The position numbers were made by a program, and so were the translations under genes. The notes beneath the pieces were generated by a model that saw only the letters and a program-made list of their open reading frames with translations, made no database searches and was not told the origin of the DNA. A stretch of DNA of 64,000 nucleotides from Styela clava. Its lineage: Eukaryota. The stretch covers positions 9,052,001-9,116,000 of the forward strand of contig NC_135258.1 in NCBI RefSeq assembly GCF_964204865.1, written 5' to 3'. Positions 20,915-57,766 of this stretch are shown here, in pieces (the first letter of the stretch is position 1; each line of letters opens with the position of its first letter).

Positions 20915-22458
20915 GTCGATGATGTTTTAGGTGACCAACAGATATTTATCAGTAAGATTCTCACTCATAACATAACCCAGTATGTAGTTTCTGGTGTATT
21001 GTATACTTTTGGGCAGACAGGCTAACTGAAAGTTTTCCGCTAAAAATCTAATGTTAACTGAAACTACAAATCCCAGATTTAGTTTCCAAAAATACCTAAG
21101 CACTAATCAAATCAGCCACATAATAAATTAATGCTTGAACTGACTTATCATTTGCTGACCGCTTTTATGTGCCTACGCAATTTTATGTAATAAACTGTAT
21201 ATTTGCCATCACGTCACACTAATGATGAAATCATCGCATTGCAAAGATTACTTTGTCAATCGGACTGAAACAAATTTATCTCACCTATACATTTTAGCAT
21301 GCATAAAAATAAGGCTCCTAACCAGTAAAACATAAACTGGACTGGATGTAGAAACCGTAGCTATTAAAACGAAAGAGTTGTCAGTGCAACAGTAAATCTC
21401 TACTCCGTCTATTTTAAAACTACCTCATTTTACGATTTTCCTCAGAGCTCTGGTATTTAAAAGTCACTTCAAATAAAGCATCACCTATCGTTGGGTGGTT
21501 CAACAAACAGACGATCATGCAATGCACGCCTGAACTTTATCGAATATGTTTACACACTAATCCGTATCTCTGGTGAATTTCCCCAACTCGTCCGATGAAT
21601 AAAATAACCCGTGACTAATGCATATATAGAAAGAGGGAGATCTTCAAACACCAACAAATATTTAAGCAAGATGTGAAAATTTGTCCAGCTAATGAGATGA
21701 CAAAAATTACACATTTCATCACTTTGCTGATAACTAAAGTTGAGGTATTTCATCACTATGCCGATAACGAAAGTCGCGGTTTGATCGTGAAGAAACTAAT
21801 TATGTGTTGTGTTGCATTTAAACATGACTCATTTTCACTGCCTATATACAACCTGAGGTGTTCAAGTATACTAGTCCAGACGATGTTCATTTATATTATA
21901 TCTGACATTAGGAAAACATGAGCCATATAAAGCAATGCTAGCATATCGAATTCTTTTCCAACGAACTACGCCGCGACGAGTATCCCATTCAATATCACTC
22001 GATGAATGCAACGTATCGCTTTTGATTCTCTCAAAATTAATCTCATTGTCATGTGATGTGCGAGAAATTAAACTTATGGAATGAACAATGAAATGCAATA
22101 AAAATTTAAATATGCAGTAAATTGCATCGTGTATTCAGATGATATGTTCACATTGAACGGTTTAACGGTTGAACCGATTTATCTGTAGCAATGGGCAAAA
22201 TAATACTGGGGCGATAAGGACCCGTATTCACAAACATTGTGTTTTTCATGTCAGTAGCTTTCAAATATAATAAGATAAATCAATGCTTTTATTTTTATTT
22301 TTGTATTGCCTTTTTACAAGATTGATTTCTATATTTATGTTTTGATTAAGCGTCATTCACTCCTCAACTTAGTAAGCCAAGTTGCTTGTTATCAAATATC
22401 AGTTACTTGCTTAGATGTATACAATCACAATTGACAGCACTGGCTCATTTTCCAAATT

Positions 22459-22852
22459 ATTACTTATCGATCTTAAGATCGGTAAGTATATTGATAGGTA
22501 TTTGTATGTATGTCTGTCTGTGTGTGTGTGTGTCTGTTAGATGCACGCGATATCTCACGAAAGCGGGATTGAATCTGCTCCAGATTTTGCATGTGCATTC
22601 ATCTTATCTCGGACCAGAATCCTATTGATTTTGGGCGAATTATGTCGTATAATTAGCGAGTTATCAATCAATTATTGATATAGTGATCTAGATTTTTGTA
22701 GAGCGAGAGAATTTTGAAACCCGCCGAGTGTGTGTGTGCGATGCGCAGTGCGCAAGTTACAAGAGCGGATGAATCGAAACTGCAGTTTCTGTTTTGGGGG
22801 ATCCCCTAACTATCGATCGATAAGTCTTCGGTTTCCAACCGATATTCTCGTT
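22459..22852 (+). mobile_element. Helentron-associated (HINE/DINE-1-like) element
   Basis: 5' hairpin TACTTATCGATC-ttaa-GATCGGTAAGTA, (GTCT/GT)n microsatellite, 3' subterminal inverted repeat GATCGATAAGT, stem-loop TCGGTT-tcc-AACCGA, T-rich ends. Other copies at 48697-49098 and 49412-49721. Confidence 0.75.
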
Positions 22853-23751
22853 TGAGCGTTATTCATAAATCGTCTCACTTTTTTTTAAATCAACTTCATC
22901 TTTTTACTCACTAACAATTCTTACCTATACTTTTGTTCCGATTTCCAGCAACGGCGCAATAGCTTCATCTTGCATTATATTTGACATTTATTTCAAAATT
23001 CTGAAAATGATATAGCATTGCAAACGAACACGTGAATCAAAATATATTTCCACAGAAGAAAAAATCTTGTGCGCAAAATGAAAGAATTACCTCCGTTAAA
23101 ATTGTTTGCTATCTAAATATTTTTAGATAACATTTTGATTACCAGTTTTAAGCGCAAAAGCAATACTTCTTATTTCTCAAGTTTCTAATATGAATTTCGC
23201 TTTGTTTGAGAATTGCTTCTTCAATATCAAATTGTTTAGCATGACTATAACTGATATTTAGCATTATTAGGCAATTTCTCATGAGGAAATGAAATTGAGT
23301 CAAGCTGCTTACACTTTCACTTTGGAAGTGTTTTCGATGGCTGGCGGTAAATTTTGTTTGTAAGACTGAGTTGCGCAGACACATCGCAAATGCGCCATAT
23401 TGCATCAGATATTACAAATAGAATTATAATGTGACGGAAAAGTCGATTTTATCTCAGGATAGCAACTTATTGTTCCAGATATACTTTTCATTTTATTATG
23501 GATAAGAAAATATGCTTACAGGATAAAAATAACGTTTTGAAATATGTGCTCACGGTCCTAACCTAATAGAGTTTCTATAGTTTAGTATTCTCATTACCCA
23601 CTTGTTATAAATGAAAGTTATTTAATTAGTTACAAATAGCGAGAAATGAAAATAAGTTTGAATTGAAAATAAATATATGCTCTGTCTACATAATATATTG
23701 AAATAATGGAATATAAACATCCATACTACTTAGATTTTCATAAAGTGAATT

Positions 23752-23826
23752 GAGTACTCCTGAAGTATGCGCACCAAGATGTCGCACAACCTGAACCCTA
23801 ACCTGGTACACAATCCGAGTTCAGGT
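23752..23826. mobile_element. Truncated MITE family A (mirror copy ~47732-47806)
   Basis: Left arm GTACTCCTGAAGTATGCGCACCAAGATGTCGCACAACCTGAACCCTAACC; right arm largely missing. Confidence 0.8.
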
Positions 23827-26208
23827 GAAGTAAAGTGAGTAAAATGTGCTGAAATCTTCAAAAATTTGGTTTTTGTTGAAAATATAAATTGTGCCCGAAG
23901 CGTGCATGCCTGTTTAGTCATGATGTCGATTTTGCAGACAATAATGGGGATTTCCATACGGTCATATTTTCATACTTAATATGTATAGGTACATATGGGC
24001 CGTGTTTATATGTCGTTCTTAAATATGTTCATGAAGGTTTTTTTTACAGAAAGAAGTAGGAGTCATCGTTACTCATAAGGTAGGCGTTCAAAAACAAAAT
24101 AATAATATTTTACGATCTATTTATGATCGCATTTCAACATGTCTGATATAATAGTTCTGAACAGACTTTCAACTCATGTGATGTTGTGTGAGTGATGTGT
24201 GGGAGGTTATTATGTCAGATAAACGTATTCAGTTACGAAATTGGTATTATTCAAAGATAAGAGTGAAAGTTCAAGATGTATGTAAATTGAAATTTGTAGT
24301 TGTGCAAGTTGTAACAGGCTCCAGAATTTAAACATTTCCTTGTATATTATATGAAATACAACTGCTCTAAAACTTGTAGACTGAAGAGTTATGGTAACAT
24401 CCGCGTTTTCCATTTTACTATTTTCATTCTCGCGATAATTACGAATGGCTAAAACTACTGTAAACCTATTAAATTCTTTACAAACCGAAAATTACCTAAA
24501 TGTACGTATGTAGCATTTCATTTTCTAAAATCGAAAGGAAAAGTGATTTATTCATTCTACCATTTGAATGTTGATGCGGTCTTTTGAAATGACAACACAT
24601 ACAAACACTATAACAGAAGTAAGATATGTAACATTTTTAGTATAATCTAATATTGAGCAACTGAGGAAGAGTCCTGCAGAGTGTTAACTCAGAAAAATTC
24701 AGCGTTTGTGTAAATAACTCAATGTTATCTGATAATAATCCAACGGAAAATATTTTTAAATGAATGGAAATTTTTTTTAAACTATTTTATTTTATTATAA
24801 AACAACCTGGCATATTGTTCTACATTTCTACGGTTCCTATACCACTAGCTGACAAATTTTACTTATTTTCCTCTTCTAACCCCTTCCAGCCATAAAAATA
24901 CTAACAATTCAAAATTTTCTGATTTAAACAAGCTGCAGCAGAAGTTACAACTGCACACTAATTGTACAGTCTGCACTATTAGTAGCTTTACACGTATTGC
25001 ATAATAATCAATGACATTTATCATTAGCGCGAATGATCATCTATGGCTATATATATCTTATGACAGCTACATCATGTGATAGTAATTTCTCATGAGAGAC
25101 TTGAACAGTAATGCTGAAAAGCAGACTCGTTCAACCGTTTTTGTTTGCACCAAATGTTTTGCCCAATGAATCGATTTTTATGAACTTTGTTTGAAATTTA
25201 ATGATATGTTTTACGCTTCAATGGAATACAGTAAATATGTGTTATTTCTGTCATGTAAATTTTCAGTTCAGTTTTTGTCACTGCTTATGATTACAAAAAT
25301 TCTATTTAACCATATTTATGTTTTTGGTAATTTGAAATGCAGCAAACACAGAAAAATGGAAATGTTGGTTAAAAAGAAATGTTAGTTATCTACAGAGGCA
25401 ATAGTATAACTTCTATTAAGACGACCTCTGACCTCTTTAAATAAAACGATTTTCATAACGAAGGTATAAGAAAAGTCCTCTTGTTTGTACATTTTGATTA
25501 ATAGAGATATTTTTCGCGTTGTGGATTGAACACCTACACCACTTTCGTACAAAGCAAAACGAAAAATATACTCAGATAGTATTTTGGGAAGAATTACTTG
25601 TAACTGTGCCAATTGAAGCAATTTGAATTCAATATAATGAATGTTTATATATGTATAAAACGCTCGCATGTAGTTTAAAATTGACTCTATAAATCGTTAT
25701 AGAGTTTTCAATGGTTACACGCTAAGATAAATTCAGTGTATATATATTTACTAAACCTTTGATACTTTATAATTATCTTGTTCATAGATGATACGTTTTT
25801 TTCTAGTTTTATCTGTAAGTTTCAACTTTACCAAATTTCACGTTGTTTTCATCTCCTTTATTTTTCATCTCGCGCTATCGTTCCGGCGCACGAGGTATCC
25901 TCACATTAGTACATCGACTTATCCAATAATTACTAAATTAATGGACATCTTCGTATTAAGAAACCGAGATATTAAATATGGCACGCTTCCATCTGAATAC
26001 AGTTATAATAATTCTGAAGGCTATATTCCTATGATGGCAAAGAAATATATTTTTCTTCTATTATTGATGGTATATATATAATATGAATACGATCAAATGA
26101 AAATACATGAAAAAAATAGACACGTTATGATTTAAATGGCCTCAGTTACTACGAATACGTCCTAGTTGCATGCCTGACCATGAATGTTTCTAGCAAGCAT
26201 AAAAAAAC

Positions 26209-26416
26209 GGCACTCCGGAAGTATGTGTACCAGGTTAGGCCATATTTTTATTCTAATTCTTATTGTTTTAGTTATATTACGAGTTCGGGAACAGTCTGTG
26301 TTAGCCACATAAATATATCCTCTGTCCATAGGTTTAAGTCCCTTTACACAATTTGACGTAAAATAGGCGAACAAAGTTAGTTACCTCCATATTGGTACAC
26401 ATACTTCTGGAGCGCC
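26209..26416. mobile_element. MITE family B (mirror copy 45155-45362)
   Basis: TIRs GGC(A/G)CTCC(G/A)GAAGTATGTGTACCA, perfect 8-bp TSD aaaaaaac. Confidence 0.85.
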
Positions 26417-28812
26417 AAAAAAACTAACCAACCAAGGCAAATCTCGCACAATATTTATTCTGAAACAATGAATTTAGGAAACAAAATTTGTATATTTCAG
26501 TTCTGATCAACTTATTTCCATCTCGATAGGAAGAATAAGTTACGTGTTATTTCACGTTCTCCAGGCCATAAATTGACTTTGATCCTGAAATTCTAAATAT
26601 TACTAATTTTACATGCTCAAATACAAATTTAGGCGAGGTTTAATTTACAGAAAATTGGCGACATATCCCGATTCTAATAGGAGTTGAAAGCAATCAAAAT
26701 TATTTATATTATCATGCAATTTCGTATTCGTATATTATTATGAGTGTCCGACTGAAGTGTAAACGAAAAATGTCCTGCTTCTTCCGCCCAATTAGGTTTA
26801 AAATGTTGGTGGAGACAAAATATATCGATTCTTAAAGAAGTTGAAAGCAGTTTAAAGTCTTCATATTGTTATGCAATTTTGTACGCTTTTATGAGTAACG
26901 TAATGTAGCCTAAATGCAACATTATGCATATTTCACTCAATTGGTTTAAAATTTAAGTGGCGATGCCTTCGTTTTGGTCAAACTACGTTGATACGGAAGG
27001 TTAAGTAATCTCGTACTTGTGCCTTAGCCAACCAGGCCATCGCTTACCCAAGCCCCTTAAATGGAGTGACGAAAGTCGGTAAGATATGCTGAACAACGAA
27101 AATTCAAAAACCAACAACACCTTACATAACGTCTTCTGAGTGTGTGAACACTTTAAAAATCATTGCGCCTGATTATAACCCCGAAATCGAATTGTGAGGG
27201 ATTTTACTACTTTTTTAAAAGTGTAATTGTGTAAATTGTTCGTTCAATATTGTTCAAACAATACATGCAAGTATGCACCGGAGTTGCATTATTGGTGTCC
27301 AATTTATTGCATGCGCGAAACATTCTATTAATAATCAACAATTTGTGCTATTACAAAAATAAAAAATTCTACTAAAAGTTTTTAGTAATTTAAAACATAA
27401 TATTTGTGTGCTTTTTGAATAATATACAAAAAATAAGATTCAGATACTTCAAGTCTCATTCTTGACTCATATGTATTTATTATAACAATTTTGTTCCCAT
27501 ACGATAAATAACACGCACAGTGTAGCAATTTCATAAGTTTCGCAATAGTATAGGTTCATAGTATAGGTCACCTAAAAAATCATGTGACTGGAAAGTTAAG
27601 AGTTGATATGTGCCTGTTTACTACAACTTTAGCTGTCAGAAATAGTCTGTTCGATTTTGATATATGTTGCATTTGCAGTGGTCAGTATTGTTTGAGAATA
27701 TTTCCAGACAATTTCAGACAAGCGTATAACCTGATAGGTCAAACTATAGGCATGGTATAAGTTGAAAGACGCATTCAAGGACATACTAAAAAATGATATT
27801 GAAAGATAATTAGAGACACTTTGCCTTTCTTCGAATGAAAAAATAATTTTGATTGTAATATATTGCCATTTTATAACATCTCTCGCAGATTTAAATAGGG
27901 AAATTATCTTATAGGCAAGCTATCTATTCAATATGCCGTAACAGGTATACACGACTGTGTGCGTACGTGTTCAGTTTCAAATCTGAACTTATTGATTACG
28001 GATGACTTCGTAACGTATTTAGACAGTTCTTTTCATTAAATATATCATTTAATTAATAATGAAGCCCGCAAAGCGAGATATTAGCCAGCGTTAATGAAAA
28101 CTTTTGAAGTTGCAACCTCTCAAGATGTTTATAAGTTCAATAAAATGCAGGCATTTTGAGTTCATGAGAAAACAAATATTTTAACAGTATGGAGAAATAT
28201 ACAGTTGAGAGCGTAGATAAAATATGATATATGTCACGTGTTTGACTACTAGTAATGACACTACTTCTGAATTTTCGATCGGTTTCAGATTTCAATGAAG
28301 AAATATATGTATTTTTTAGACCATATCGATACTGGCATTTAATTTCATATAGTTTGGAAATATAATGAATTTAGAGAAATTTTTTTTAATATAGAATGAA
28401 ATTGTTGTAGCTTATACAAAATACTCAATTAATAGAGTATTGATGTTAATTAAAAGTCGGTTTCCTTTGAGGTCATACAATGGTTTCTACTATTTTGCTA
28501 TAACTATGTTTTGCGGTACAGGTTACAAGGATGCGAATACCAACGGTGATCATTGCAATTGGACATATTTATTGCTATTCCAGATTACAATCATGGTTTG
28601 TCTAGTGGAAGCCTATAATAACATTACCTAATCTGGGTGTGTACGAAATTAGGAATATGTGAGGAAAATAATCTTATCTTATCGGGTTATTATGCATGTC
28701 TTATTCAGAACAAATGTATGAAATATAATTAAGTTTACAATAAACTTGCTGAATTGGTAGAAGTGAAATGAATGTTCTGTAACGTAACTTCTGTGCTAGC
28801 GAATAGACAAAT

Positions 28813-31800
28813 ATGTCTGAAAAAACAGGATCGTCTCCACAAAGTTCTACATTCTCAATACAGGGAGAAGAGGTATGTTGAAAAAATTTCCCCGTGTTTG
28901 TTGTAAAATTGCGCTGTGTGTATCTGCGGCCGTTTAAAATTTATCGCTTTGATGTTCTAATAATAGAACCTTCAGCAAGCCACAACAGGTGTTCAACAGT
29001 ACAGTGTCGCTTAAGTTTCGAAAATTCTGTATTCTTTATCGTTGTGGTGAGTCATCAATAACATATATGGATGATGAACGAATGCATTGCAGTTATGCAA
29101 AAATCATTCAATTTTATTTTTTTTCTCACATAGAATCAACCACAAAGAAAGGGTCTTGGTGTAGTGACAGCTTCAGTGTTCATTGTTGGAGCAATATGTG
29201 GGAGTGGAGTATTGGCTGTCCCACAGGCTATCGTTAACATCGGATATATAGGTAAGTAGAATTGAAGAGTTATTTAGGAACGAAACTTTTATTTCACCGT
29301 TCTCATGTCTAGACGCAAACTCAAAATCTCCAGAAATGTTCAGTAAAGTTGGACCCATTATGAAACGTTTTAATAACCTACTGAAGTTGCTTTCATACTA
29401 ATATTTTTCCGTTTTGACTGATTCCTGTTCCAACAGGTCCTATCGTTCTCGTTGCCTGTGGACTTATTTCTTCATATACCGGCAGCATCCTCGGGAGATG
29501 TTGGACATTACTTCGTGCTCGATATCCCGAATATGAACACGAGAGAATTACTGATCCGTATCCAACCATAGCTCATAGAGCAGGAGGAAAAGTTGCCGAA
29601 ATTGCTACAAGAGTTTGCATTGATGTTACGTTATTTGGAGGAGGTAAAGTAAAAATGAGACGAATCACCGGAATTAAAGTGGCACATTTTTTTGTGCACG
29701 TATGCTGCAATTGTCTGAATACTTGCATTTAGACATAAAACTAAGATATATGTATCATGAATCCTTTTTTGAGTAGTATTAGAATAAACATAGGCGGCTT
29801 TAAATGATAATAACACTTTCGAGCAATCATGAGAAATTGACTATTAGAATATATGAAATAACAATTAATGAACGACAATTTAAACAAATACAAAAAAAAG
29901 AGTAAATATTAAAATATTTTGCAACATTCCGGCATATCTTAGATTCTTTTTGCGGTGAGAATATTATTACCACTTGTGCCTATTTTATTACTTATATCAC
30001 CCATGCAAGTCTGTCAAAGCAACTAGTTTATTTGCAAATCGGTATTGAATAACATTTTTTGCGAATTTTGACGAGTAATATTCGATATTAATGCATACAG
30101 TATGAAGTAATATTATGTATTTGTATTTCAGCCACAGTGTTCCTTCTGTTGATAGCGGGCAATATTTCAAATCTGATTGCTAATCTTGGCGATAAACAGT
30201 TTTCTCTTTGTTATTTATTACTTATTGTTACTGGAGTTCTTACTCCTTTCACGTGGCTAGGAACTCCAAAAGATTTTTGGCAAGCAGGAGTAGTGGCTGC
30301 ATGTACGAGTGTGATAGCATCATTTTTTGTATTTGGAAGTTTGATGACTGTAAGTATAAATTTTTCAATTTGTATCATAAAACAGCATTTTTCTGACAAT
30401 TGTTTTTAATTTTTCATAAGGCTATTCCAGACCTTCCGAATCCACAGCATGCAGCAACGCAGTGGTCTTTATTCTTTAGTGCATTCGGTACGATATTATT
30501 CTCATTTGGAGGAGCAAGTTGTTTTCCAACTATCCAAGTCGACATGAAACAACCAAATAAATTTCCCGTATCTGTTGTAATTGGAATATCAAGTAAGCAC
30601 GAGTCAAAGAAATTGTATAGTTAGTTTAAATGAATGTAAATAAGAGTTGAGCTGTTTTTCGGAACTTCTAAAAAACTAACCAACTAAAAATATTCTACGA
30701 ATTACACTTCTTTTAAACAAACTATCTGGCACATTGATCCAATAACAATGAAGCAAATCTTGATATATATAGTCTAGTTTAGCTATAATCGACGCGTGGC
30801 CCAATAAAGTACACGTATACTTGGAGCAATGACCTTTTGATCTGCCCTCGAAGTTAAATTTGTTATCATCGTGTTTTACTGAAACTTGTGCTTTTTTTTC
30901 TATTTTTTTTCTTTCTTGTAAAACTGGTATCGAAAATTTCAATTCAACCCACTGAACGTATAGAACAGTGTTTCCCAACCCGAGCCCGCGGTCTCAAATG
31001 AGTCCGCGGAGCGTTTGAATGATTCCGCAACGAGCCAGAAATTCAGCCACGTTGCGATTTACGTTAGAATTTACATAAAACATTAAAAAGCAAGTTTAGT
31101 AACATCACATTTATCGAGTCAATAATTACTGGTTACTGAGTATATCTGGGCATATATTCGAATATTCAACTATTGGAATAGCAATTTACTATTCGAAAAT
31201 TTGGTAACAGGTGACGCGATAGGTCACTTGCGCTCAATCAGACGATTGGATTTCACGGTGACCGTGCACTTGAACCCACGTACATTTGAACCCAGGTGTA
31301 TATCCACGGGTTCAATCTATATGCGGGTGCTAAAACCCATGGGTTAGGGTTAGTATGGGTTCAAATATCCGTAAAACAAAACAAAAAATTTCCTCAGGTG
31401 CAATAGTATGCAGGTGCAGTTGTCGTGGGTTCAAATGTACGTGGGTTTAAATGTAATGGAACCGGGTTTCACAACTCACTTGCGGATTTCCGACGAAAAC
31501 ACAAATCTCCACACGCTTCGATAAATACCTAAGTGGTGTTTCTCGCGAGTTCTCACAACGAGGAATAATTTTTTTTCTTATCTGGTTGGTGTGGCTGGCC
31601 CAAATTTTCTAAATGGAAAAGCGGCAATACAAAATACTAAAAATAAAACGAAGAACACCATAAGTTTTGTTTTATGATGGTCCGCGACCGATTAAAAACG
31701 CTTTTTCGACATTGCAAATCGCAAAATTTTGGATGCTACCGTACCAGGACATTTCCCCTTAGGATTCTTTGCTTTACTGCCGCCACATTGGTACACGTAC

Positions 31801-34288
31801 AGTACTGCCGTAGGCGTTGTACGAACAGCTCAGATTTGACGAATTCACAAAAATACGAATCAAAACAAAATATAATCGGGCACTTTACCACGCATTTTTG
31901 TGTCGTGAGTAGTATCGCTTTTATTTCGTCAACACAACCGCAGATTAAAATGATCACAATAAAATTAATAATAAACCATGGCGATGAATATGTATTTTTG
32001 ATTTACTAATATATATACTTTAAATATATTTTTAATGAGTACTAAATCAAGTTGCACTTTCTAAAAATTTATAGCAGACAGTAAGATTTTTCTAACGGCG
32101 ATAACAAATTAGCAAGATCGCAAAAAATATGTATCAAAACTAAGTATAATCGGACAATATATTCTCACATTATTATGTTCACCGATTGCCATTGTATTTT
32201 AGCGAAGTAATGCTTTCATCTTGTCATAATTCGACGCAACCGCGAATTATCATGAACACAATTAAGTTAAAATAGGAATACATCTTAAATTCTCGTCGTT
32301 GTCATGGTTGAATTTTGTGCGACAGAAAAGGCCATTGTTGAAATTCGTTAAAATTCTGTTGTGTTCGGTTTTATTGCCTGTTCACACAGAGTATACGGTT
32401 GTAATAAACGCACCTTGAGTCCGCAAAGGGTTTCGCCGGTGAGAAAATAGTCCGCGACCAAAAAAGGTTGGGAAACGCTGGTAAAGAATGAAGTTGGGGA
32501 TGATGTATTCAAAAATAAACGAATCAAAGATATACTCGCTAATGCAAATATAAATAAAGGGACCTCCTGAAGTATGCGCACCAAGATGGCGCACAACCTG
32601 AACTCAGGTTGTGTACCAGGTTAGGGTTCAGGTTGTGCGACATCTTGGTGCGCATACTTCAGGAGTACCAAATAAAGATTATTCTATTTAGTTTAAGGGT
32701 CTCGAATTAAATAGAATATTCATTTACACTCTTGCCACAGCATCCTTGCGTTATACACATACGGATCCACCTGCGCAAAGGCATAGAGCAAGGAAAAGTA
32801 GTTAGTTTCACGTAACCCCAACTGTTAGATAAATAAAGATACACTGGTTCAATTATTGGTAGTGGTTTGTGCGTAATAGAATTTGAATTACTCGCAGTAA
32901 ATTAATTAGGCTACAAACTAATTGAGTAATAATATATATATACTTTGTGACATACAGACTTCAAGCCAATGAAACCAATACTATCCAAAAGTTCTCCTTT
33001 AATCACCTGTAGTCACTCATTATATATATTTTTTATCAATAATTTCAGCCGTTCTGGCAGTTTATCTTCTTGTGGGACTCACTGGATTTTTTGTTCTTGG
33101 TGATGACATGGAACCAAATGTTCTCGATGCATTGCCTCCTGGATGGATGTCTTATACTGTTAACATTCTTGTTACATCACATCTTCTTATGGCGTTTCTT
33201 ATCGTAAGCAATCCTGTCAGTCAAGAAATTGAAGGATTTTTTAAGATACCAGACAGTAAGTTGTCTAATGAACATACGCGGAGAATAGTTGAAATTCTTG
33301 CAAAAAAATACGAAAAGCTCAAATCTTTTTCTGAAAACATGACTCATCTTTGTTCAGGTTTTGCATCAAAATAAAGTAAACATTAATATATGTTATGTGC
33401 AACTACAGAATTTCGATATATTAAAAATGAATTACCTAATATTCAAATCCCTCACTTCATAATAATATAGAAGTGGTCAGAAGACCTATATTATACTATT
33501 TTTAACTTTAATGATTTTGGTGGTAACTCAACATTTACTATTCGATTGGTCCCAGTTATTTTATTTGGAAAAAATGTCTGTGAGATTATGAGCAATTGAT
33601 TTAAACCAAACATAAAATAATAGTCAGTAACTGACATCATTATTTTCATTATTTTGTTCGTTTTTATTTATACTTTTCATATATTTTTGTTTAATATGTT
33701 AGATTGTAGAGCCATGATACAAATTAGGCCTTGTAGAAAGTCTTAAACTCTTATCAATATTATGAATATTGTTACAAAATAAACTAATCTGATCTCATTC
33801 TATGATTACTTTTCACAGAATTTGGCGTCAAGAGAATACTGGTTCGAACGTCGTTGTCTGGAATGGCAATGTTTGTTGGTCTCACTGTTCCCCACTTTGA
33901 CATTATTTTGTCGTTGTTGGGAGGTTCAACAATAGCTTTAACCAATTTTATTTTTCCGCCTCTGTTCTACCTTTTGTTGTCGAGACAAAGAACTCCTTCT
34001 GCCGCTCATGGTCCTCTTCCATCATACATACAGTCTTCAATAGAAACCACCTCGGATTCAACATCACTGCACCCTCAACCTCACGTTCAATCGAGAGAAG
34101 AAGATCCTGCACAGCCAAGTTGGATGCAAGTTGATTTAGAGTTGCATATTAAAGTTATTTTAATAGAAATCATATTGATTGGTATAGTTGGAGGTGTTTC
34201 TTCCACTTACTTTTCATTTGCTTCTCTCGTTAACGGAGATTCCGGTTTTACAGTTCCTTGCTACGTCAATGTAAGCGTTGGGTTGTAG
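28813..34288 (+). CDS. Amino-acid transporter T4, 483 aa; exons 28813-28872, 29134-29251, 29437-29643, 30132-30349, 30421-30592, 33049-33255, 33819-34288
   Basis: GT-AG introns, conserved exon sizes. Motifs: GAICGSGVLAVP, FSFGGASCFPTIQ. Intron 5 is expanded by TEs. Confidence 0.92.
30966..32480. mobile_element. Non-autonomous hAT element in T4 intron 5
   Basis: TIRs CAG(T/C)GTTTCCCAACC, 8-bp TSD gtatagaa/gtaaagaa. Confidence 0.85.
31257..31463. mobile_element. MITE family C nested in the hAT element
   Basis: TIRs built from TACATTTGAACCC units, 9-bp TSD ggatttcac/gggtttcac, internal GGGTTAGGGTTAG. Second copy at 36581-36783. Confidence 0.85.
32560..32669. mobile_element. MITE family A (110-bp hairpin)
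   Basis: Near-perfect inverted repeat, perfect 8-bp TSD aaataaag. Confidence 0.9.
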
Positions 34289-34334
34289 AGATGCAAGAAG
34301 CTTAACAAGCAAAACATATAAGCATTGAAATTTT

Positions 34335-34445
34335 GGTGCTCTAGAAGTATACGCACCAAGATGTCGCACAACCTGAATCCTAACCGGTACGCACCTACTA
34401 TGTTCAGGTTGTGCGCCATCTTGGTGCGCATACTTCTGGAGGTCC
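34335..34445. mobile_element. MITE family A just downstream of the T4 stop
   Basis: Hairpin, TSD gaaatttt/gcaatttt. Confidence 0.85.
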
Positions 34446-36321: not shown

Positions 36322-37120
36322 CAGGGTCGTCCAACCCGCGGGCCACATGTGGCCCGCCGTAAGTTTCCGAGTGGCCCGCGCACTATTATTCGAATCCCAA
36401 TGTCTTTCACAAATCTAGGCGGCCATTATTGCAACCTCTGATAAAAAAATTATTCCTTGTCATTCAAACGTGCGAGAAGCCCCACTCAGCTATCGGAAGC
36501 TTATTCAAGTCCCATTGTAAGCGTTATTGCTGGAGAGGGATGTTTGAGTTTATTTTTATCGTGTGCCAGGTATTTCAATCGGTTCCATTACATTTGAACC
36601 CACGTACATTTGAACCCATGACAATTGCACCTGTATGCTATTGCACATATGGAATTTTTTTTGTTTCACGGATAGTTAAACCCATACTAACCCTAACCCA
36701 TGGGTTTTAGCACCCGCATATAGATTGAACCCGTGGATATACGCATGGGTTCAAATGTACATGGGTTCAAATGTACGTTCACCATTTCAATCTGTTTTCT
36801 GTCTTTTTCTTTGAAGCTAGAAGAGGCGGTTTTTATGATCTCAATATTTGACAGCATTTAGGCTACTTGTGGGAGCAAGTTTTTTGCTGATGAACCAATT
36901 CAAATCCCCCGTGAAATCACTAATTTCTAACAGTCATATGAAAAATTCGCTATGAATTGCTTCATCGTCCATCGCAGCAAATATTGACAAACTTATTGGA
37001 TAAAAGCGGTGTCATACTTGACAATAAAATATCTATGTTTTGTAAAAACTTTCGACTTAACTGTATCTTCATGTTTTTATAATTTTGGTGTTAGGGCTTT
37101 GTTTGTTGTTTCATAAATCT
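36322..37120 (+). mobile_element. Truncated hAT (Buster/GTF2IRD2-like) element with a transposase C-terminal relic
   Basis: Left terminus CAGGGTCGTCCAACCCGCGGGCC. ~36860-36995 reads YLWEQVF/LMNQFKSPVKSLISNSHMKNSL*IASSSIAANIDKL, resembling the hAT dimerisation region. Absent from the T6 paralogous intron. Confidence 0.75.
36581..36783. mobile_element. MITE family C nested in the hAT fragment
   Basis: Perfect 9-bp TSD atttcaatc, internal CTAACCCTAACCC. Confidence 0.9.
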
Positions 37121-52300: not shown

Positions 52301-54959
52301 TTTTGATTTCCGACAACACAACAAATCTTCTGCAGTCTATGGGTGGAATTCGATTTTATCCTTGCTACATGATGATGATAGTATTCTGCATACTTACTCC
52401 ACTTTCTTGGATTGGAACTCCGAAAGATTTCTGGTATGCAGGTCTAATTGCTGCTGCAACAACCACAATAGGAGCTTTGTTAATCGTAGCTGGAATAGTT
52501 CAGGTAAACTTCATCATTCAGCACATGATGAATATTTAAATCCGGTCTGAAATAAATTATTTTTGAAATTAGATTCATTCCTAAAACCTTCTCGTATTAT
52601 TATCAGCGCCTTTTAACAAGTATAATTAAAAACCAATACGTTGTACTTAATTATAGAAACACTGCATTTTCAGAGAAACTCGATTTTTATTATCCTATAT
52701 TTTATAGGAGTTTGTTGGCCCAAATCCATACTGATGTTTTAATATGAAAGAAAAATATCAAAATGCCAAAATACTAACCTATTACAAAGTGAGATGCCTG
52801 AGTAACTACCGTCGCCGATATTCATGTCTATTTGTTTACGTTTGTTTGTGACTTGCTTTCCTTCTCTTTTGGTGGGTGAGCACGTGTAATGCATTTTAAA
52901 CTTATTTTCAAGTTTTGTTCATTCCCAGATTCGTCGCCTCAACTTTTTTTGTGTGTGTATTACTTTATTTTTGCAAATGTATCAAAATAAATTTTATCTA
53001 TCTGATGCATTTCAGGATGCGCCCGAACATGTTGATTCATACAGACCAGAACCAACAGCCTCGTCGTTTTTCAATTCATTTGGAGTTATCGTTTATGCGT
53101 TTGGTGGAGCTAGTTGCTTTCCTACAATACAAGTTGATATGAAAAATCCAAATAAATTTAATACAGCAGTTGTTTTGGGAATAATTGGTAAGTAGGTAAC
53201 TAAATCATATACTCCGCTAAATGATGCTCTTCAGCCCTACACTTGTTCCAGATGTTAAACTTATAGCATTGAAATCGTAGCAAAAGAGCATAGCTCAAAT
53301 TTCGTTAGGAGCGTTTCACCATGGAAATTGGCGGACCTGTAATGAAGGATCCGTTCAAACATATTATAAAGTGGGTATGGTGAAATAAAAAGCGTTCACT
53401 TCAAATTAAAATAAAACGGAATTTTTCGATGAAATATCGAGTCCGACCCAATAGGAATTTAAAAAAATTGAAAGTACAATAGCCTGCTAGCGTTTCAACC
53501 ATCTTTAATGGCATTGATTTGTTCATTCGTTTTGGTCCATTTGTGCCCAAAAACGTCTCAAAGGTACATTTCGTGCCCAATAACTAAGCACGTAGTGTTG
53601 CTATGTGTCATTTGAAGCGACACTGATTTTATCAAATGAGAGTAACGCATGTCAAATCAAGATATATTTCGCAAATAACGTGTTCCATATTTTTGTTGTC
53701 AATAAAAAGAAATGGGTATGAAATTGTAAATTTCTTCATTAACAATTCAGTTTTAAGTGCAAAATTCACGATTTCTAGAGCTGAGAACCGTCGTCAATGT
53801 CAATTGTTTTTTTAATTTCTAAAAATCCTCAGGTGTAATCTTTCTTTATTTCCCTGCTGGAGCTGCCGGATATTTCGTATTTGGCAACGACATGAAACCT
53901 AACGTATTATCTGCTTTGTCCCCTGGATGGATTTCGTACACAATCAACATCTTGATTACATCACATCTCTTAATGGCATTCGTTATTATTTCAAATCCAG
54001 TGACGCAAGAAATTGAAGGTTTCTTAAATATTCCAGAAAGTAAGTTTTATGTATGTAAATAACAATCGGAATTGATAAATTTCACAACCTAATGATATTT
54101 ACTCCAAACCATTGTCATTTCCCTAAGCACCCCATATATACAGCGTAAGAATTATTGGAAATATTTTCTTTTTATTGAAAAACAGATAATTCACTTCACA
54201 TATACTTAGAAAAATAAGTGAAATAAAATCATAATTATGGTACTGCACTTGTGAATTTAAAGGTGATCCCCTCCAACCTATTACCTTTTCTGAATATCTG
54301 TTGAGAAACTTATTAGAATAAAATCACAGAATCGCTGAAACTTTGATACCACCTCGACCAGACAGATGCTAAAAAATGAATGATGATATATTAATGAAAT
54401 ATATTTCCCAAATATTTTTTGTTTGCTTTTTTGTTACTAATTAAACTCGTCGAAGTGAGTGAAAAACATTACTTTTGGCAGAAAATTAGAATGTTTGTGA
54501 TGCTATTATAACTAAATATAATTTTCAGAATTCACTTGGAAGCGTGTGATGACTCGCACAATCTATATGCTTGCTGTATTATTCGTCGCTCTCAGCATTC
54601 CACATTTCAACGTTATACTTTCCTTAGTTGGAGGCTCTTTAATTGGCTGCACCTGTGTGGTCTTCCCGCCGTTATTTTACTACTTATTATCAAGGCAACA
54701 GAAGCCTGAAGACGCCTACGGGCCACTACCGGAGCACATGCTGCATCCGTATACACCAGCTAATAACTACAGAGCATTCGAAGCAAACTATAACTGGAAG
54801 CAAGTAAACTTGAGTCTCCACATGAAAGTCTTCCTGTTTGAAATCATCATTTTTGGAGTGGGTGCCGGTGTTTCTTCAACTTACTTTGCGATCCAGTCTT
54901 TGGTAACAGGATCCTCTGGTTTCACTGTACCTTGTTATGTTAATGCATCGGTAGGTTGA
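49306..54959 (+). CDS. Amino-acid transporter T6, 439 aa from an internal ATG; exons (49282)49306-49390, 50780-50986, 52286-52503, 53016-53187, 53833-54039, 54529-54959
   Basis: All exons in frame with canonical sites. Sequence upstream of 49207 is replaced by arm A'. In-frame ATG (MAAVFIIG) just before TM1. Confidence 0.78.
49412..49721 (+). mobile_element. HINE/DINE-1-like element in the first intron of T6 (intron 2 of the paralogs)
   Basis: Same family as 22459. Absent from T5 (empty site tcttta|tttcaa at ~35407), no TSD, T-rich target. Confidence 0.8.
51245..52065. mobile_element. 821-bp non-autonomous TIR element in a T6 intron (intron 3 of the paralogs)
   Basis: ~34-bp perfect TIR CGTCACGCTAATAACCGAATTGCGTAAGTCATTTTT flanked by ATAT. 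Empty site catatggtt in T5 (~37803). Confidence 0.9.
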
Positions 54960-55828
54960 TTCGTGTTAGATTTCTAAGAATGGTAAAACAACCTGTGAAA
55001 CCAACTTTTCATGACTGTATTCTTAGGAAATGTTTGTCTGTAGCCACGAATATTATGTCCATTTGTATACTCTATGCTTCCAAAGCATTTCTATCACTCT
55101 GTATAGGAATAAAAATGTGAAAAAATTTGAAATATCTCTAGCAGATAATAAAAATTGCTTAATAACTAACTAATGAACTTTCACAATTTTTCTATATATA
55201 TTGCCTCTGAGGACAGTATATTTGAGTTATTTGTTATAACGCACTACGAAATTCTGGGAGTTTGTCTTTTTAAAAGCAAACTATAATGATCTAAATATAT
55301 ATAGTAATTAATGTTGTCATATTCCGTAAATAGTTTTTATCCGACATGACGAGAGGTTTTATTTTAGATTTTCTGATATGCATGAATACACTTTTCCTAA
55401 ATTTTAAATCTGAAAGTAAAGTTCTTGTAAAAGAACCTCGGAATTTTTTTCACAATTCATTATATTACTATTGACCCTAAAGACTGACTGGGTTGAATTT
55501 ATGTGATTGAGGTCCATTTGAGGACTAGTTAACATGTTGGCTTGATCTCCGATCTCCTGAACCCAGTAACATATTTCACCTAGCTACTTTTGAACACATA
55601 TATCTTTATATTTTTTATTGTGAAAATATTTTATCAAAAGAGAAAAACGTGCAATAAATAAATAAACATAAAAAAACGTAACTTTTGTAATAAGCCGATA
55701 CTTCTACTCTAGTGCAGGAGTAAACTGTGCAAAAATCGTGACCGTTTTCAATCTCGATGTTTTGTTTACTCTTGTATCCTGCATTATTTCCTCTATATTT
55801 TTAACCTTTTTCGATTTGTTTATGATCA

Positions 55829-57766
55829 TCAACTAACAGTTTTGGCAGACATCGATGATGAAATACGTTTGAATTTTGATTCTATATTACGCTTCTTGTT
55901 AACATCATTCAACCATTCCAAAATATGTTCTGTTTTACCAGGATCACAAAAATTTATGTGATCTGGCATGGATGGAATAGGCTGAAAATGTGTTGCGTGT
56001 GCGGACAACAATGTTGACGACCTTGGAGAGTCCGGTAGCATAGAAGTTCTTGGAGAATGTGCTAAATTATTAATTTTTAAATCTAACGAAATGTATTGCA
56101 CTGGTTGTTTTTGTGGTTGACCACTCAAAGGTACTGTTTGTCGATAGCTAACGGCAGAGTTTTTGTTGACTTTGACGATTGGCGCTCTCGCACTTGTAAT
56201 CTTAGGAGGTTCAATAATATTTGTCTGTTTGCGTGCTCCATCGCTTCGATTCAACTTAGCAGAATATGACATAAATGTTTTTCGTTGTTTTGGTGCTTGA
56301 TCCGGAAAAGATGGAGAAATAATTGCCTGTTTGTTTTGTACATACTTAGATATAGGCATGATATTTCCTTTCCTCGCGGGTCGAGCTGCGACGAAACCGG
56401 TCGCATTTCGTGTAGGAGGTCTTGAGGTCTGTACTTCCGATGGTGCATTTGCGTTTTCTGTGCTATCGTGCGCTGTATTTTGCAAATTTACTGAATTACT
56501 GATAATCTTGGTTGCCAAATCTAAAATCTTCTGTTGAGAATATGGTTTTGTAGGGACCGTTTTAACTTGCTGTTGCGAAAGATTTTCACGTGTGTTTTGT
56601 TCTTCTTGTTGTATTTTGCGCCTCGTAACAGTTACTCTAGTAATTGGGGACACGAAATTGCTCGAATCTTCTTCCTCGTCCAAATTGCTTTCATTTGGCG
56701 TAGCTTTTCTCTCGTTTTTGATTTCGATCTTGTTTTCCTTTGACTCATCGGCAGCTGCCCAGCCTTCTTTAACTCCACGTTGTAGCTTCTTGCTTACTGA
56801 GTGAAGAAGAGTTTCGACGTAGGGAGGTTCCTCCATTTTATCAGTTACAGCTGAACTGAAACGTACGCGTTTCTTTTCTTGCTTGCCGTATGTTGATACG
56901 TGCTTTGCAGAAGCTCCAGGCCAGTCTGGCGAATTTGATCTCGAATACTTCAACGCACTCGGTGCTCTTTTTTCTGTGGTATTTTTCTCCAAAGCTTTTG
57001 ATACTTCTTTTTGAAACGTCGTTCCATCTGGAGACGGAGTTTTAGTTTTCTTACTCGGCTTTTCTTTGGTTGGTGATTCTGCCTCGCTCGCGCCATCTCC
57101 TCGGCTACGATGCTCATAAAATGGAACGTAGTTTACGATAGTGTGATGAGGTAAATGTGTTCCTGACGATATATTGTGTTTATTAGCTAATGTTGGATTA
57201 TAAAATGATCTGTTTTTGTAAGATTCAGATAATAAAGCTTGGCCTGTTGCTGATATTGTGGCATGCGATGGAGTCCAGTTATATGGCACTGAGCTGAAGG
57301 CTGAAAGTCTTGATGCAGATGTACTTGGCCGGACTGGTAATGTGTTATTATTAGTTTGCGACGTGGATGCGTAAAGTGTAGCGGACGGCACGGAAGAATT
57401 TCGCCAATGGCTTGATTGTCGTTGTAGATTTCTGGATGAAGATCGTTGAAATAAATTTGGAAGCCTACTTCTGGCTGAAGTTTGCTTATACTGAGCTCCA
57501 TGCCTCGGTAGTGAATGAAATAGCATAGAATATGAACCTCTATGCTCCGGGGCATGAATAGCTTGATAAGCAGTTGCTGAGCTGAGTCCCAAGTTACCAT
57601 TGGAATAGGTTTTTTCAACTCGAAATTGATCTAGTTCTCGTGGCCGTTGACCTGTGACTCCGTCGGGGCCTTTGAGGTCTTCTTTGATACGGTGAGTAAT
57701 ATGCATCTTGAGTGGTTTGTTTTCTCTGAAATTATCACTGCTGATAAGAACATCTACCGCGGCCAT
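55829..57766 (-). CDS. Intronless ORF X, 645 aa, S/T/P/K/R-rich, probably disordered, function unknown
   Basis: A 1.9-kb ORF in AT-rich DNA. Differences from its duplicate are mostly synonymous. Contains KKRVRF and a C-terminal KTEHILEWLNDV segment. Confidence 0.85.
   Translation of the reverse strand: MAAVDVLISSDNFRENKPLKMHITHRIKEDLKGPDGVTGQRPRELDQFRVEKTYSNGNLGLSSATAYQAIHAPEHRGSYSMLFHSLPRHGAQYKQTSARSRLPNLFQRSSSRNLQRQSSHWRNSSVPSATLYASTSQTNNNTLPVRPSTSASRLSAFSSVPYNWTPSHATISATGQALLSESYKNRSFYNPTLANKHNISSGTHLPHHTIVNYVPFYEHRSRGDGASEAESPTKEKPSKKTKTPSPDGTTFQKEVSKALEKNTTEKRAPSALKYSRSNSPDWPGASAKHVSTYGKQEKKRVRFSSAVTDKMEEPPYVETLLHSVSKKLQRGVKEGWAAADESKENKIEIKNERKATPNESNLDEEEDSSNFVSPITRVTVTRRKIQQEEQNTRENLSQQQVKTVPTKPYSQQKILDLATKIISNSVNLQNTAHDSTENANAPSEVQTSRPPTRNATGFVAARPARKGNIMPISKYVQNKQAIISPSFPDQAPKQRKTFMSYSAKLNRSDGARKQTNIIEPPKITSARAPIVKVNKNSAVSYRQTVPLSGQPQKQPVQYISLDLKINNLAHSPRTSMLPDSPRSSTLLSAHATHFQPIPSMPDHINFCDPGKTEHILEWLNDVNKKRNIESKFKRISSSMSAKTVS

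What the first reader, a model, noticed from the sequence alone, without database searches (positions are those of the whole stretch)
22346..57184. Two-junction template-switch rearrangement (A...B-Ainv-B') with microhomology at both joints
Seen: the sequence runs into ORF X up to 42919, then jumps to 28671 on the opposite strand (shared TTATT). It copies back to 22346, then jumps forward to 35178 (shared CTTAA, CTCAA at 49207-49211, preceded by TGAC in both donors) and resumes. Established: this is the FoSTeS/MMBIR signature. One event explains both the inverted and the direct duplication, so this shows how the transporter array grows.
Basis: partly seen in the sequence, partly recalled or inferred. 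Interest (0 to 1): 0.75.

Follow-up and report, generated by a model that had tools for sequence, protein, structure and literature searches.

The report
Inverted spacer copy between two transporter genes
A 6.3-kb piece of DNA from between two transporter genes has been copied, flipped and joined by tiny sequence overlaps between two neighbouring gene copies, a known kind of copying slip, but those gene copies look older than the slip.

Summary
A (22349-28671) recurs inverted at 42915-49208. B (35178-42919) recurs directly at 49207-57184. Both joints have 5-bp microhomology and no longer homology. This is the known DUP-NML-INV/DUP layout of human complex rearrangements (PMC6902434, passages).

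The claim that one event made both duplications is not supported. A/A' is uniformly about 2.4% diverged. B/B' is a mosaic:
- transporter introns 4-7%;
- last transporter exon, dS 0.12;
- C-terminal 63 codons of ORF X, dS 0.34;
- the 1.16 kb next to joint 1, dS 0.03, with a sharp change point at 41755.

Best reading (0.5): two older [transporter + ORF X] units already existed. A later microhomology-mediated template-switch chain replaced their spacer with a fresh copy of the middle of X plus inverted A. That truncated one X copy and the 5' end of transporter T6. So it shows remodelling of the array, not its growth.

The read check was inconclusive. No listed record bridges joint 2, although 183-bp contigs in two runs of one sample end exactly there. 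Assembly artefact is unlikely (about 0.07). This is a known kind of rearrangement and of moderate interest.

The parts
22349..28671 (+). Segment A, the donor. It is most of the spacer between the divergently oriented transporter genes T3 (minus strand, first conserved exon at 20525-20409) and T4 (plus strand, first conserved exon at 29134).
   Evidence: pairing with 42915-49208. (positions of T3 and T4 exons).
28672..35177 (+). Segment C, not duplicated. It holds transporter T4 (29134-34285) and the 0.9 kb upstream of T5.
   Evidence: no second copy in the window or among the candidates scored in the assembly, apart from a 1.5-kb dispersed repeat at 30951-32489.
35178..42919 (+). Segment B. 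It holds transporter T5 from 75 bp upstream of the acceptor of its first conserved exon, the 3' flank, and the 3' two thirds of an ORF X copy.
35253..40711 (+). Transporter T5 (Aa_trans, PF01490). Six conserved exons, approximately 35253-35363, 37339-37500, 38018-38248, 38750-38920, 39576-39803 and 40274-40711. All are open.
   Evidence: (Pfam, exon by exon). The donor of the first exon lacks 4 bp that T6 has.
41565..42919 (-). ORF X fragment (codons 195-645 of X). It is cut at joint 1 and has a 1-bp deletion near 42337, opposite 56602 (codon 389).
41755..42919 (.). Low-divergence block of B that ends at joint 1. 11 differences in 1145 filtered sites, and the last 369 bp are identical to B'. 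The change point is at 41755.
42915..42919 (.). Joint 1: TTATT is shared by the X-side donor and the 28671 end of A.
42920..49206 (-). Segment A', the inverted copy of A. 175 substitutions in 6271 aligned columns, and the largest gap is 17 bp.
49207..49211 (.). Joint 2: CTCAA, where both donors have CTTAA. It lies in the intron upstream of T6's first conserved exon, 75 bp before the acceptor.
49207..57184 (+). Segment B'. It holds transporter T6 without its native upstream region, the 3' flank, and codons 195-645 of the intact ORF X.
49282..54959 (+). Transporter T6 (Aa_trans). Six conserved exons, approximately 49282-49392, 50779-50940, 52279-52509, 53013-53183, 53829-54056 and 54522-54959. 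All are open. It has ATG where T5 has AAG in the first exon.
55829..57766 (-). ORF X: an intact intronless ORF of 645 codons with no Pfam match. It has homologues at 28-43% identity, and its C-terminal domain is nearly invariant among them.
48696..49100 (.). Copy of a high-copy dispersed element of about 405 bp inside A' (it equals 22457-22860 in A), 108 bp from joint 2. It is not at the joint.
   Evidence: The fold z-score of the A copy is -3.4, with small hairpins only.
49407..49725 (.). Related dispersed element present only in B', in T6 intron 1, inserted after the B/B' split.
51241..52070 (.). 830-bp dispersed repeat present only in B', 95-99% identical to 39 other scored copies.

Best explanation
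The structure is real, and its two joints were made together by one microhomology-mediated, most likely replicative, template-switch chain (MMBIR/FoSTeS type). That event did not create the direct repeat.

Before the event there were already two older tandem units, each a transporter followed by a convergent ORF X: [T5-X5] and [T6-X6]. In the later event a nascent strand copying the T5-X5 unit did the following.
1. It moved by homology onto X6 near 41755 (56019 in B') (inferred).
2. It copied X6 up to codon 195.
3. It jumped on 5 bp (TTATT) to the opposite strand at 28671.
4. It copied the T3-T4 spacer back to 22349.
5. It jumped on 5 bp (CTTAA) into the intron upstream of T6's first conserved exon, and went on.

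The net result is that whatever lay between X5's 3' part and T6's first conserved exon was replaced by a fresh copy of the middle of X plus an inverted copy of A. What was lost would have been X5's 5' third and promoter, and T6's own upstream region. X5 is left 5'-truncated, and T6 is left without its native 5' flank.

Shown: the layout, the microhomologies, the lack of longer homology, and the divergence strata. Inferred: the replicative nature of the event, the homologous first switch, and the lost spacer.
For: Layout and joints. Microhomology of 5 bp or more occurs at 0.79% of random joins. There is no extended homology at either joint. No repeat-family end lies at a joint, and the joint flanks are unique among scored candidates.

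Age strata:
- A/A' is 156/5935 = 2.63%, or 137/5815 = 2.36% outside one 120-bp patch. Its longest identical run is 181 bp, against a null median of 191, so there is no sign of recent conversion.
- In gap-free 100-bp windows, A has a median of 2 differences (n=49) and B non-coding has a median of 5 (n=17), Mann-Whitney p=4e-6.
- The change point in B/B' is at 41755: 5.76% to the left and 0.96% to the right.
- dS is 0.34 for X codons 583-645 (11 synonymous, 4 non-synonymous), 0.119 for T exon 6, 0.043 for T exons 1-5, and 0.032 for X codons 195-582. The last does not differ from A/A' (Fisher p=0.40) but differs from the X C-terminus (p=2e-6).

The young material (X middle plus A') is one contiguous block, 41755-49208. 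That fits a single act of synthesis.

Large indels: four in the T5/T6 part, and none over 17 bp in A/A'. Three of the four involve dispersed repeats.

X has no third copy in the genome that could have donated the divergent C-terminus. That C-terminus is the most conserved part of the family, so its many synonymous differences mean long co-existence of two functional copies.

The same sample (runs X2-X4) holds exact A'-specific and B'-specific contigs and also A-state contigs. A 183-bp contig ends at 49210 in two runs.
Against: The read-laying output was dominated by repeat rows, with thousands of rows not shown, so the joints rest on the assembly alone.

The two-stage history needs a lost spacer that cannot be seen, and an extra homogenisation of T exons 2-5 and introns 2-5 (3.2-4.0%).

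Without an outgroup or population data, the strata could also come from gene conversion after one old event, or from exchange with divergent alleles after one young event.

T exons 1-5 synonymous divergence is not significantly above A/A' (p=0.11).

The X fragment shows only 3 non-synonymous changes in codons 195-582, where 10.7 are expected for a neutral fragment of A/A' age (P=0.006). A plain pseudogene does not predict this.

Junction sequence cannot tell replicative switching from end-joining of copied fragments.
Confidence: 0.5

Rival explanations
1. A single DUP-NML-INV/DUP event with two template switches duplicated B, and so created T6 and the X fragment, and inserted inverted A between the copies. 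The uneven divergence arose afterwards.
For: It needs no unseen deletion. B/B' homology starts exactly at joint 2 and ends exactly at joint 1. The layout is one of the three structures described for one-step DUP-NML-INV/DUP in patients (PMC6902434). T exons 1-5 dS (0.043) and X codons 195-582 dS (0.032) are close to A/A'.
Against: dS of 0.34 in X codons 583-645 and 0.119 in T exon 6, 7.3% in intron 1, and a sharp change point at 41755 cannot arise after an event dated by A/A' at 2.4%.

If the event were as old as the oldest stratum, the whole 6.3 kb of A/A' would have to have been homogenised evenly right up to both joints. Yet A/A' shows no long identical tracts and even divergence outside one patch.

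No third X copy exists to donate divergent sequence.
Confidence: 0.2
2. The same history as the best explanation, but not replicative. A break or deletion between X5 and T6 was repaired by microhomology-mediated end-joining that captured a free 6.3-kb copy of A. The copy could be a replicated fragment, as in the breakage-replication/fusion model.
For: 5-bp microhomology is equally typical of alternative end-joining. PMC12807874 (abstract and passages) argues that many copy gains ascribed to MMBIR come from replication and fusion of broken ends.
Against: It needs clean breaks at both ends of A on a sister or over-replicated copy, while the donor locus stays scarless. It does not by itself explain why the adjoining X block has the same synonymous divergence as A'. 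The hallmark of that model, adjacent parallel breakpoints with small offsets, cannot be assessed in a fixed, diverged allele.
Confidence: 0.15
3. Assembly artefact: A'/B' are the other haplotype of A/B, or a chimeric read path, wrongly placed in the contig.
For: Differences between the copies are biased to synonymous sites, as allelic differences would be. Copy-specific contigs have roughly half to three quarters of the depth of shared ones, which fits alleles as well as paralogues.
Against: There is no N anywhere in the window. A haplotype mis-join would give a direct A'-C'-B' order, not inverted A' without C, and would not give 5-bp overlaps in mid-contig.

dS of 0.34 and 0.12 in parts of B/B' is far beyond allelic divergence.

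A 183-bp contig in X2 and in X3 ends at 49210. That fits a true fork, with two different left neighbours, at joint 2 in that sample (inference).

Both states are seen in sample S2, and at 49119 in the Hi-C run of sample S3 (3 of 6 reads).
Confidence: 0.07
4. Non-allelic homologous recombination or transposon-mediated rearrangement within the tandem array.
For: The region is a tandem or inverted array of six paralogous transporter genes. A dispersed element lies 108 bp from joint 2.
Against: There is no homology beyond 5 bp at either joint. The breakpoints lie in a spacer, an intron and a single-family ORF, not in paralogous exons. No repeat end coincides with a joint.
Confidence: 0.03

Closest known systems
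DUP-NML-INV/DUP complex genomic rearrangement (PLP1 locus patients; PMC6902434, passages read)
   Same: Two duplicated segments are separated by a copy-neutral segment. [quoted passage not shown] The proximal segment lies inverted between two direct copies of the distal one, which is one of the three structures the paper lists. The joints have microhomology or microhomeology, and the paper assigns them to iterative template switching (MMBIR).
   Different: The human cases are de novo or recent, span hundreds of kb to Mb, and often use inverted Alu or LINE pairs for one switch. This one is 6-8 kb per segment, is diverged by 1-6%, has only 5-bp overlaps at both joints, and lies in an invertebrate-like genome. 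The direct repeat appears to predate the joints, so it may only mimic the one-step pattern. The paper's supplementary figures S7 and S8, which draw the structures, could not be seen.
FoSTeS/MMBIR template switching (my knowledge of the Lee/Hastings/Lupski models; described in PMC6902434 and PMC12807874 passages)
   Same: Templated segments are taken from within 20 kb in cis. The strand reverses at one switch and returns at the next. Overlaps are 5 bp, and the donor is not lost.
   Different: There is no direct evidence of replicative synthesis. A homologous (paralogue-guided) first switch is inferred here in addition to the two microhomology switches.
Breakage-replication/fusion (PMC12807874, abstract and passages)
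   Same: It explains copy gains and inverted joins by end-joining of replicated DNA ends, with microhomology at the joints.
   Different: Its hallmark of adjacent parallel breakpoints, and its tiling short insertions, are not assessable here. It needs several breaks, with all original adjacencies restored.
Concerted evolution (gene conversion) in tandem gene arrays (general knowledge)
   Same: B/B' shows a patchwork of divergence from 1% to over 10%, with sharp boundaries.
   Different: Conversion explains the patchwork but not the two novel joints or the inverted A'.

Membership tests
DUP-NML-INV/DUP | Two duplicated segments with a copy-neutral segment between them | tested here: met
   A and B each occur twice. 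C (28672-35177) occurs once in the window and among scored candidates in the assembly.
DUP-NML-INV/DUP | [quoted passage not shown] | tested here: met
   42919 (distal end of B) joins 28671 (distal end of A). 22349 (proximal end of A) joins 35178 (proximal end of B). The definition is from PMC6902434.
DUP-NML-INV/DUP | Both duplications arise in the same event | tested here: not met
   A/A' is 2.4-2.6% diverged. B/B' strata run from 0.96% to 5.76%, with dS up to 0.34. Later conversion could mask a single origin, so 'not met' is itself an inference from divergence.
FoSTeS/MMBIR | Microhomology of a few bp at each joint | tested here: met
   TTATT and CTTAA. The chance of 5 bp or more at a random join is 0.0079.
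FoSTeS/MMBIR | No long homology at the joints (not NAHR) | tested here: met
   Local alignment scores within 300 bp either side of the breakpoints are 14 and 21, against shuffle medians of 14 and 19.
FoSTeS/MMBIR | Templates nearby in cis, and donor retained | tested here: met
   The donors lie 14-27 kb from the joints on the same contig, and A is intact.
FoSTeS/MMBIR | Replicative (conservative, error-prone) synthesis | not testable with these tools
   A cluster of 19 substitutions in 120 bp at A 27472-27591 is unexplained and is not evidence either way.
Haplotypic false duplication in an assembly | Copies are alleles: divergence in the allelic range, and half depth on each copy | tested here: inconclusive
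   dS of 0.12-0.34 in parts argues against alleles. Depth has no single-copy control in the one stretch that could be laid.
Haplotypic false duplication in an assembly | No reads span the joints | tested here: inconclusive
   None of the 24 listed pieces bridges 49208. More than 43,000 pieces and 1,237 loose-end rows were not shown. A 183-bp contig ends at 49210 in X2 and X3.
NAHR / unequal crossing-over in a tandem array | Breakpoints inside long paralogous homology | tested here: not met
Transposon-mediated rearrangement | Element termini at the joints | tested here: not met
   The nearest dispersed element ends 108 bp from joint 2. The joint flanks are unique among scored candidates.
Aa_trans (PF01490) transporter genes | Match to the Pfam profile | tested here: met
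   Tested exon by exon. 5 of 7 exon ORFs pass the 25.6-bit cutoff on their own (27.6-47.1 bits) and 2 are below it (18.0 and 23.8 bits). The five T5/T6 exon ORFs tested match profile positions 4-41, 39-92, 97-172, 239-304 and 320-377 of 410. Exons were not joined.

The most novel reading that the evidence does not exclude
The junction event was a 'double upstream capture'. An inverted copy of a bidirectional intergenic region was placed head-to-head between two 5'-truncated genes. It gave T6 the far-upstream region of T3 and gave the X fragment the upstream region of T4. At least the X fragment stayed under purifying selection for most of the time since: 8 synonymous and 3 non-synonymous changes in codons 195-582, where 10.7 non-synonymous changes are expected if it were neutral. 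One template-switch chain would then have rewired two genes at once, and both products were kept by selection.
Probability: 0.15. Interest if true: 0.6.

Novelty: new member of a known kind. Interest (0 to 1): 0.4.

Why it matters
Complex duplication-inversion rearrangements with microhomology are well documented as fresh disease alleles in humans. Old ones retained in natural gene arrays are seldom dissected joint by joint.

This case gives clean joints and internal 'clocks'. The clocks show that a layout which looks like a one-step DUP-NML-INV/DUP can be a later remodelling of older paralogues. That is a caution for reading mechanism and gene birth from structure alone.

If transcripts of T6 and of the X fragment start in the inverted spacer, it would also be a natural example of one rearrangement rewiring two genes.

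Tried and rejected
- **NAHR and transposon routes.** Rejected: there is no homology beyond 5 bp at the joints and no element ends at them.
- **Recent gene conversion as the cause of low A/A' divergence.** Rejected: the longest identical run is 181 bp, against a null median of 191, and divergence is even outside one 120-bp patch.
- **Selective constraint as the cause of low divergence next to joint 1.** Rejected as the sole cause: the adjoining, more conserved C-terminal codons of the same ORF are far more diverged.
- **A third X copy as donor of the divergent C-terminus.** None was found (17 of 17 candidates scored, 3 matches: X itself and the two pieces of the fragment).
- **A conserved upstream 'exon 0' shared by the six transporters,** to tell what T6 lost. 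tblastx and blastn of the six upstream regions found nothing beyond the known A and B edges.
- **Hairpin potential of the dispersed element near joint 2.** Weak: z = -3.4, small hairpins only. It was not used in the argument.
- **Calibrating single-copy read depth from repeat bins.** Abandoned: the ratios of repeat to unique bins differ about 20-fold between the raw-read run and the contig runs.
- **The read check.** I laid joint 2 because both of its flanks differ from their paralogues. The answer was swamped by three dispersed repeats in the stretch. With hindsight, joint 1 or a boundary with single-copy sequence might have told more.
All six conserved exons of T5 are open. Only its first donor site is weakened, by a 4-bp deletion.
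- **Exons were never joined.** The Pfam search and the dN/dS counts were made exon by exon and only the counts were summed.
- **Literature searches**. They were not a search for absence. I make no claim that such a case is not in print.
- **Unseen supplements.** The supplementary figures of PMC6902434 (S7, S8) could not be seen and may bear on how exactly the layout matches.

Full report
**Observation.** The window has no N. Self-comparison shows two repeat sets.
- 22349-28671 (A) pairs with 49208-42915 on the opposite strand: 96.2% over 6347 columns.
- 35178-42919 (B) pairs with 49207-57184 (B') on the same strand, in five blocks of 87-95% separated by large indels.

I read both joints directly.
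- Joint 1: B and B' share ...GTGTTTATT. The window then continues with the reverse complement of A from 28671, and TTATT is present in both donors.
- Joint 2: the reverse complement of A ends ...GAATGACGCTTAA and B starts CTGACTTAAGTAC. The window has GAATGACGCTCAAGTAC, so CTTAA is shared and one base has since changed.

Random joins of window positions have 5 bp or more of microhomology in 0.79% of 200,000 trials. Within 300 bp either side of the breakpoints there is no further homology: scores were 14 and 21, against shuffle medians of 14 and 19.

**What the segments hold.** The window carries six paralogous multi-exon genes of the Aa_trans family. The genes are:
- T1, 7629-10721 (+)
- T2, 14012-16416 (+)
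- T3, 20525-17332 (-)
- T4, 29134-34285 (+)
- T5, 35253-40711 (+), inside B
- T6, 49282-54959 (+), inside B'

A is most of the spacer between the divergent genes T3 and T4. B starts 75 bp upstream of the acceptor of T5's first conserved exon and ends inside ORF X.

ORF X is an intronless 645-codon ORF on the minus strand (55829-57766) without a Pfam match. It has homologues at 28-43% identity whose C-terminal domain is nearly invariant. It has no other copy in this 377-Mb assembly except the fragment in B. That fragment (41565-42919) is cut at codon 195 by joint 1 and has a 1-bp deletion at codon 389.

**Repeats and uniqueness.** In the assembly, A' matches only A, and the joint flanks match nothing else among the scored candidates (each search scores 40 candidates, so repeat counts are lower bounds).
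- A dispersed element of about 405 bp lies in A and A', 108 bp from joint 2.
- A related copy is a B'-only insertion in T6 intron 1.
- An 830-bp dispersed repeat is another B'-only insertion.
- B has about 1 kb of extra sequence in intron 1 that includes a fragment of a 1.5-kb repeat family.

No repeat end coincides with a joint.

**Is it real?** The look-up of sequencing runs gave four contig-level runs of one sample (X2-X5, sample S2, holding 0.64-0.69 of the sampled words) and one raw Hi-C run of another sample (X6, sample S3). I laid X6, X2, X3 and X4 on 46200-52199, with joint 2 in the middle.

The result is inconclusive for the joint. None of the 24 listed pieces bridges 49208. More than 43,000 pieces and 1,237 loose-end rows were not shown, because three dispersed repeats dominate the output. 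X6 covers the unique parts only patchily, at depth 0-2.

Some things can still be said.
The sample therefore carries A/B-type sequence and almost no private variants.
- The same sample also carries exact A'-specific contigs (46701-46895, no differences across more than 15 distinguishing sites) and exact B'-specific contigs (50106-50398 and 50402-50612).
- A contig of exactly 183 bp covers 49210-49392 in both X2 and X3. It stops at joint 2 on one side and at the B'-only insertion on the other. That is what a true fork in the sample's reads would give (inference).
- In X6, 3 of 6 reads at 49119 carry the A state and 3 the A' state.

The depth of copy-specific contigs is roughly half to three quarters of that of shared ones.

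Several points argue against an artefact.
- There are no gaps in the window.
- A haplotype mis-join would give a direct A'-C'-B' order, not inverted A' without C.
- The 5-bp overlaps lie in mid-contig.
- Parts of B/B' are far too diverged to be alleles (see the next section).

I put an artefact at about 0.07.

A/A' is evenly diverged.
- It has 175 substitutions in 6271 aligned columns.
- More than 10 nt from gaps it is 156/5935 = 2.63%.
- Outside one 120-bp cluster it is 137/5815 = 2.36%.
- Its longest identical run is 181 bp, where 191 is the null median, so there is no trace of recent conversion.

B/B' is a mosaic.

| Part of B/B' | Divergence |
|---|---|
| Intron 1 | 7.3% |
| Introns 2-5 | 3.97% |
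| 3' flank | 8.2% (about 5% without one messy patch) |
| T exons 1-5 | dS 0.043 |
| T exon 6 | dS 0.119 |
| X codons 583-645 | dS 0.34 (11 synonymous, 4 non-synonymous) |
| X codons 195-582 | dS 0.032, dN 0.0033 |

- Gap-free 100-bp windows give a median of 2 differences in A (n=49) and 5 in non-coding B (n=17), p=4e-6.
- A single change point at 41755 splits B into 5.76% (210/3645) and 0.96% (11/1145). The likelihood-ratio statistic is 60.9, against a maximum of 17.8 in 300 permutations.
- The last 369 bp before joint 1 are identical in B and B'.
- The synonymous divergence of the middle of X equals A/A' (Fisher p=0.40) and differs from the X C-terminus (p=2e-6).
- All four large indels lie in the older T5/T6 part. 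None over 17 bp lies in A/A'. By my own arithmetic, (6.6/14.1)^4 is about 0.05 if indels fell evenly.

The young material therefore forms one contiguous block, 41755-49208 (X middle plus A'), bounded by old sequence on both sides.

The C-terminal domain of X is the best conserved part of the family. Its 11 synonymous differences against 4 non-synonymous ones mean that two functional X copies co-existed for a long time before one was truncated.

**Best explanation.** Two [transporter + X] units already existed. A later chain of template switches made both joints. The steps are:
1. A homologous step from X5 to X6 near 41755 (inferred).
2. A 5-bp step to the opposite strand at 28671.
3. 6.3 kb of copying back to 22349.
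4. A 5-bp step into the intron ahead of T6's first conserved exon.

The chain replaced the old X5-T6 spacer. This needs an unseen deletion, but it needs no coincidence. B/B' homology begins at joint 2 simply because that is where the strand landed.

It accounts for three things: the equal age of the X middle and A', the sharp boundary at 41755, and the old strata.

It does not show how the array grows, because T6 was already there.

**Rivals.**
- A true one-step event with later conversion or allelic exchange (0.2).
- The same history made by end-joining capture of a copied fragment, as in the breakage-replication/fusion view (PMC12807874, abstract and passages) (0.15).
- An assembly artefact (0.07).
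- NAHR or transposon routes (0.03).

**Consequences for the genes.** All six conserved exons of T5 and of T6 are open. Over them dN/dS is 0.15 (20 synonymous and 10 non-synonymous differences).

T6 lacks everything upstream of 75 bp before its first conserved exon. In that exon it has ATG where T5 has AAG. T5's first donor site has lost 4 bp (GTGAGT in T6, GTTAAT in T5).

Orientation puts the T3-side end of inverted A next to T6 and the T4-side end next to the X fragment. Each faces the way it faces its native gene.

The X fragment has only 3 non-synonymous changes in codons 195-582, where 10.7 are expected for a neutral sequence of A/A' age (P=0.006). It also carries the frameshift, and derived changes at conserved residues, among them the invariant E318. 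Its status is unresolved.

**Comparison with what is known.** The layout meets the structural definition of DUP-NML-INV/DUP given for PLP1 patients. One switch joins the distal ends and the other joins the proximal ends, and one listed solution has the proximal segment inverted between two direct copies of the distal one (PMC6902434, passages). The supplementary drawings could not be seen.

It also meets the sequence-level criteria usually used for FoSTeS/MMBIR. It fails the single-event criterion on divergence.

It is therefore a new, old and small member of a known kind of rearrangement, with the twist that the one-step look is probably deceptive.

**Verdict.** The finding is of moderate interest. 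The decisive tests are long reads across both joints, depth with single-copy controls, an outgroup, and transcripts.

Noticed in passing
window 27472-27591 (A), about 43986-44105 (A'): A cluster of 19 substitutions in 120 bp, without any indel, in an otherwise evenly 2.4%-diverged pair. Unexplained; it could be a mutation cluster, a short ectopic conversion, or something else.
   Followed up: partly
window 22457-22860, 48696-49100, 49407-49725: A dispersed element of about 405 bp with at least 40 scored copies at 91-98% identity across the chromosomes. The third copy here sits 15 bp after the donor site of T6's first conserved exon.
   Followed up: partly
window 51241-52070: An 830-bp dispersed repeat, 95-99% identical to 39 other scored copies. 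It is a young family and is present only in B'.
   Followed up: partly
window 30951-32489 and 36580-36783: A dispersed repeat of about 1.5 kb inside T4, with an inverted fragment of the same family in T5 intron 1.
   Followed up: no
window 10762-11010 and 11020-11268: A tandem pair of 249-bp units (258 bp start to start), 99% identical, just 3' of T1.
   Followed up: no
window 11388-11820: Reverse-transcriptase-like ORF pieces between T1 and T2, probably a retroelement fragment.
   Followed up: no
window 35360-35372 against 49389-49405: T5's first donor site lacks 4 bp (GTGA) that T6 has. T6 has ATG where T5 has AAG a few codons into the exon.
   Followed up: partly
window 55829-57766: ORF X belongs to an unnamed protein family. 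Three homologues are 28-43% identical, with a nearly invariant C-terminal stretch FQPIPSMPDHINFCDP..WL.DVNKKRNIE. There is no Pfam match.
   Followed up: partly
window 32546-32672 and 34332-34459: An inverted pair of 127 bp at 86% identity, one arm inside T4 and one just after it.
   Followed up: no
same chromosome, about 1.42 Mb before the window, and genome-wide: The scan's notes list 147 entries mentioning inverted duplications in this genome, one of them an inverted intergenic block with a chimaeric paralogue. All are unchecked.
   Followed up: no
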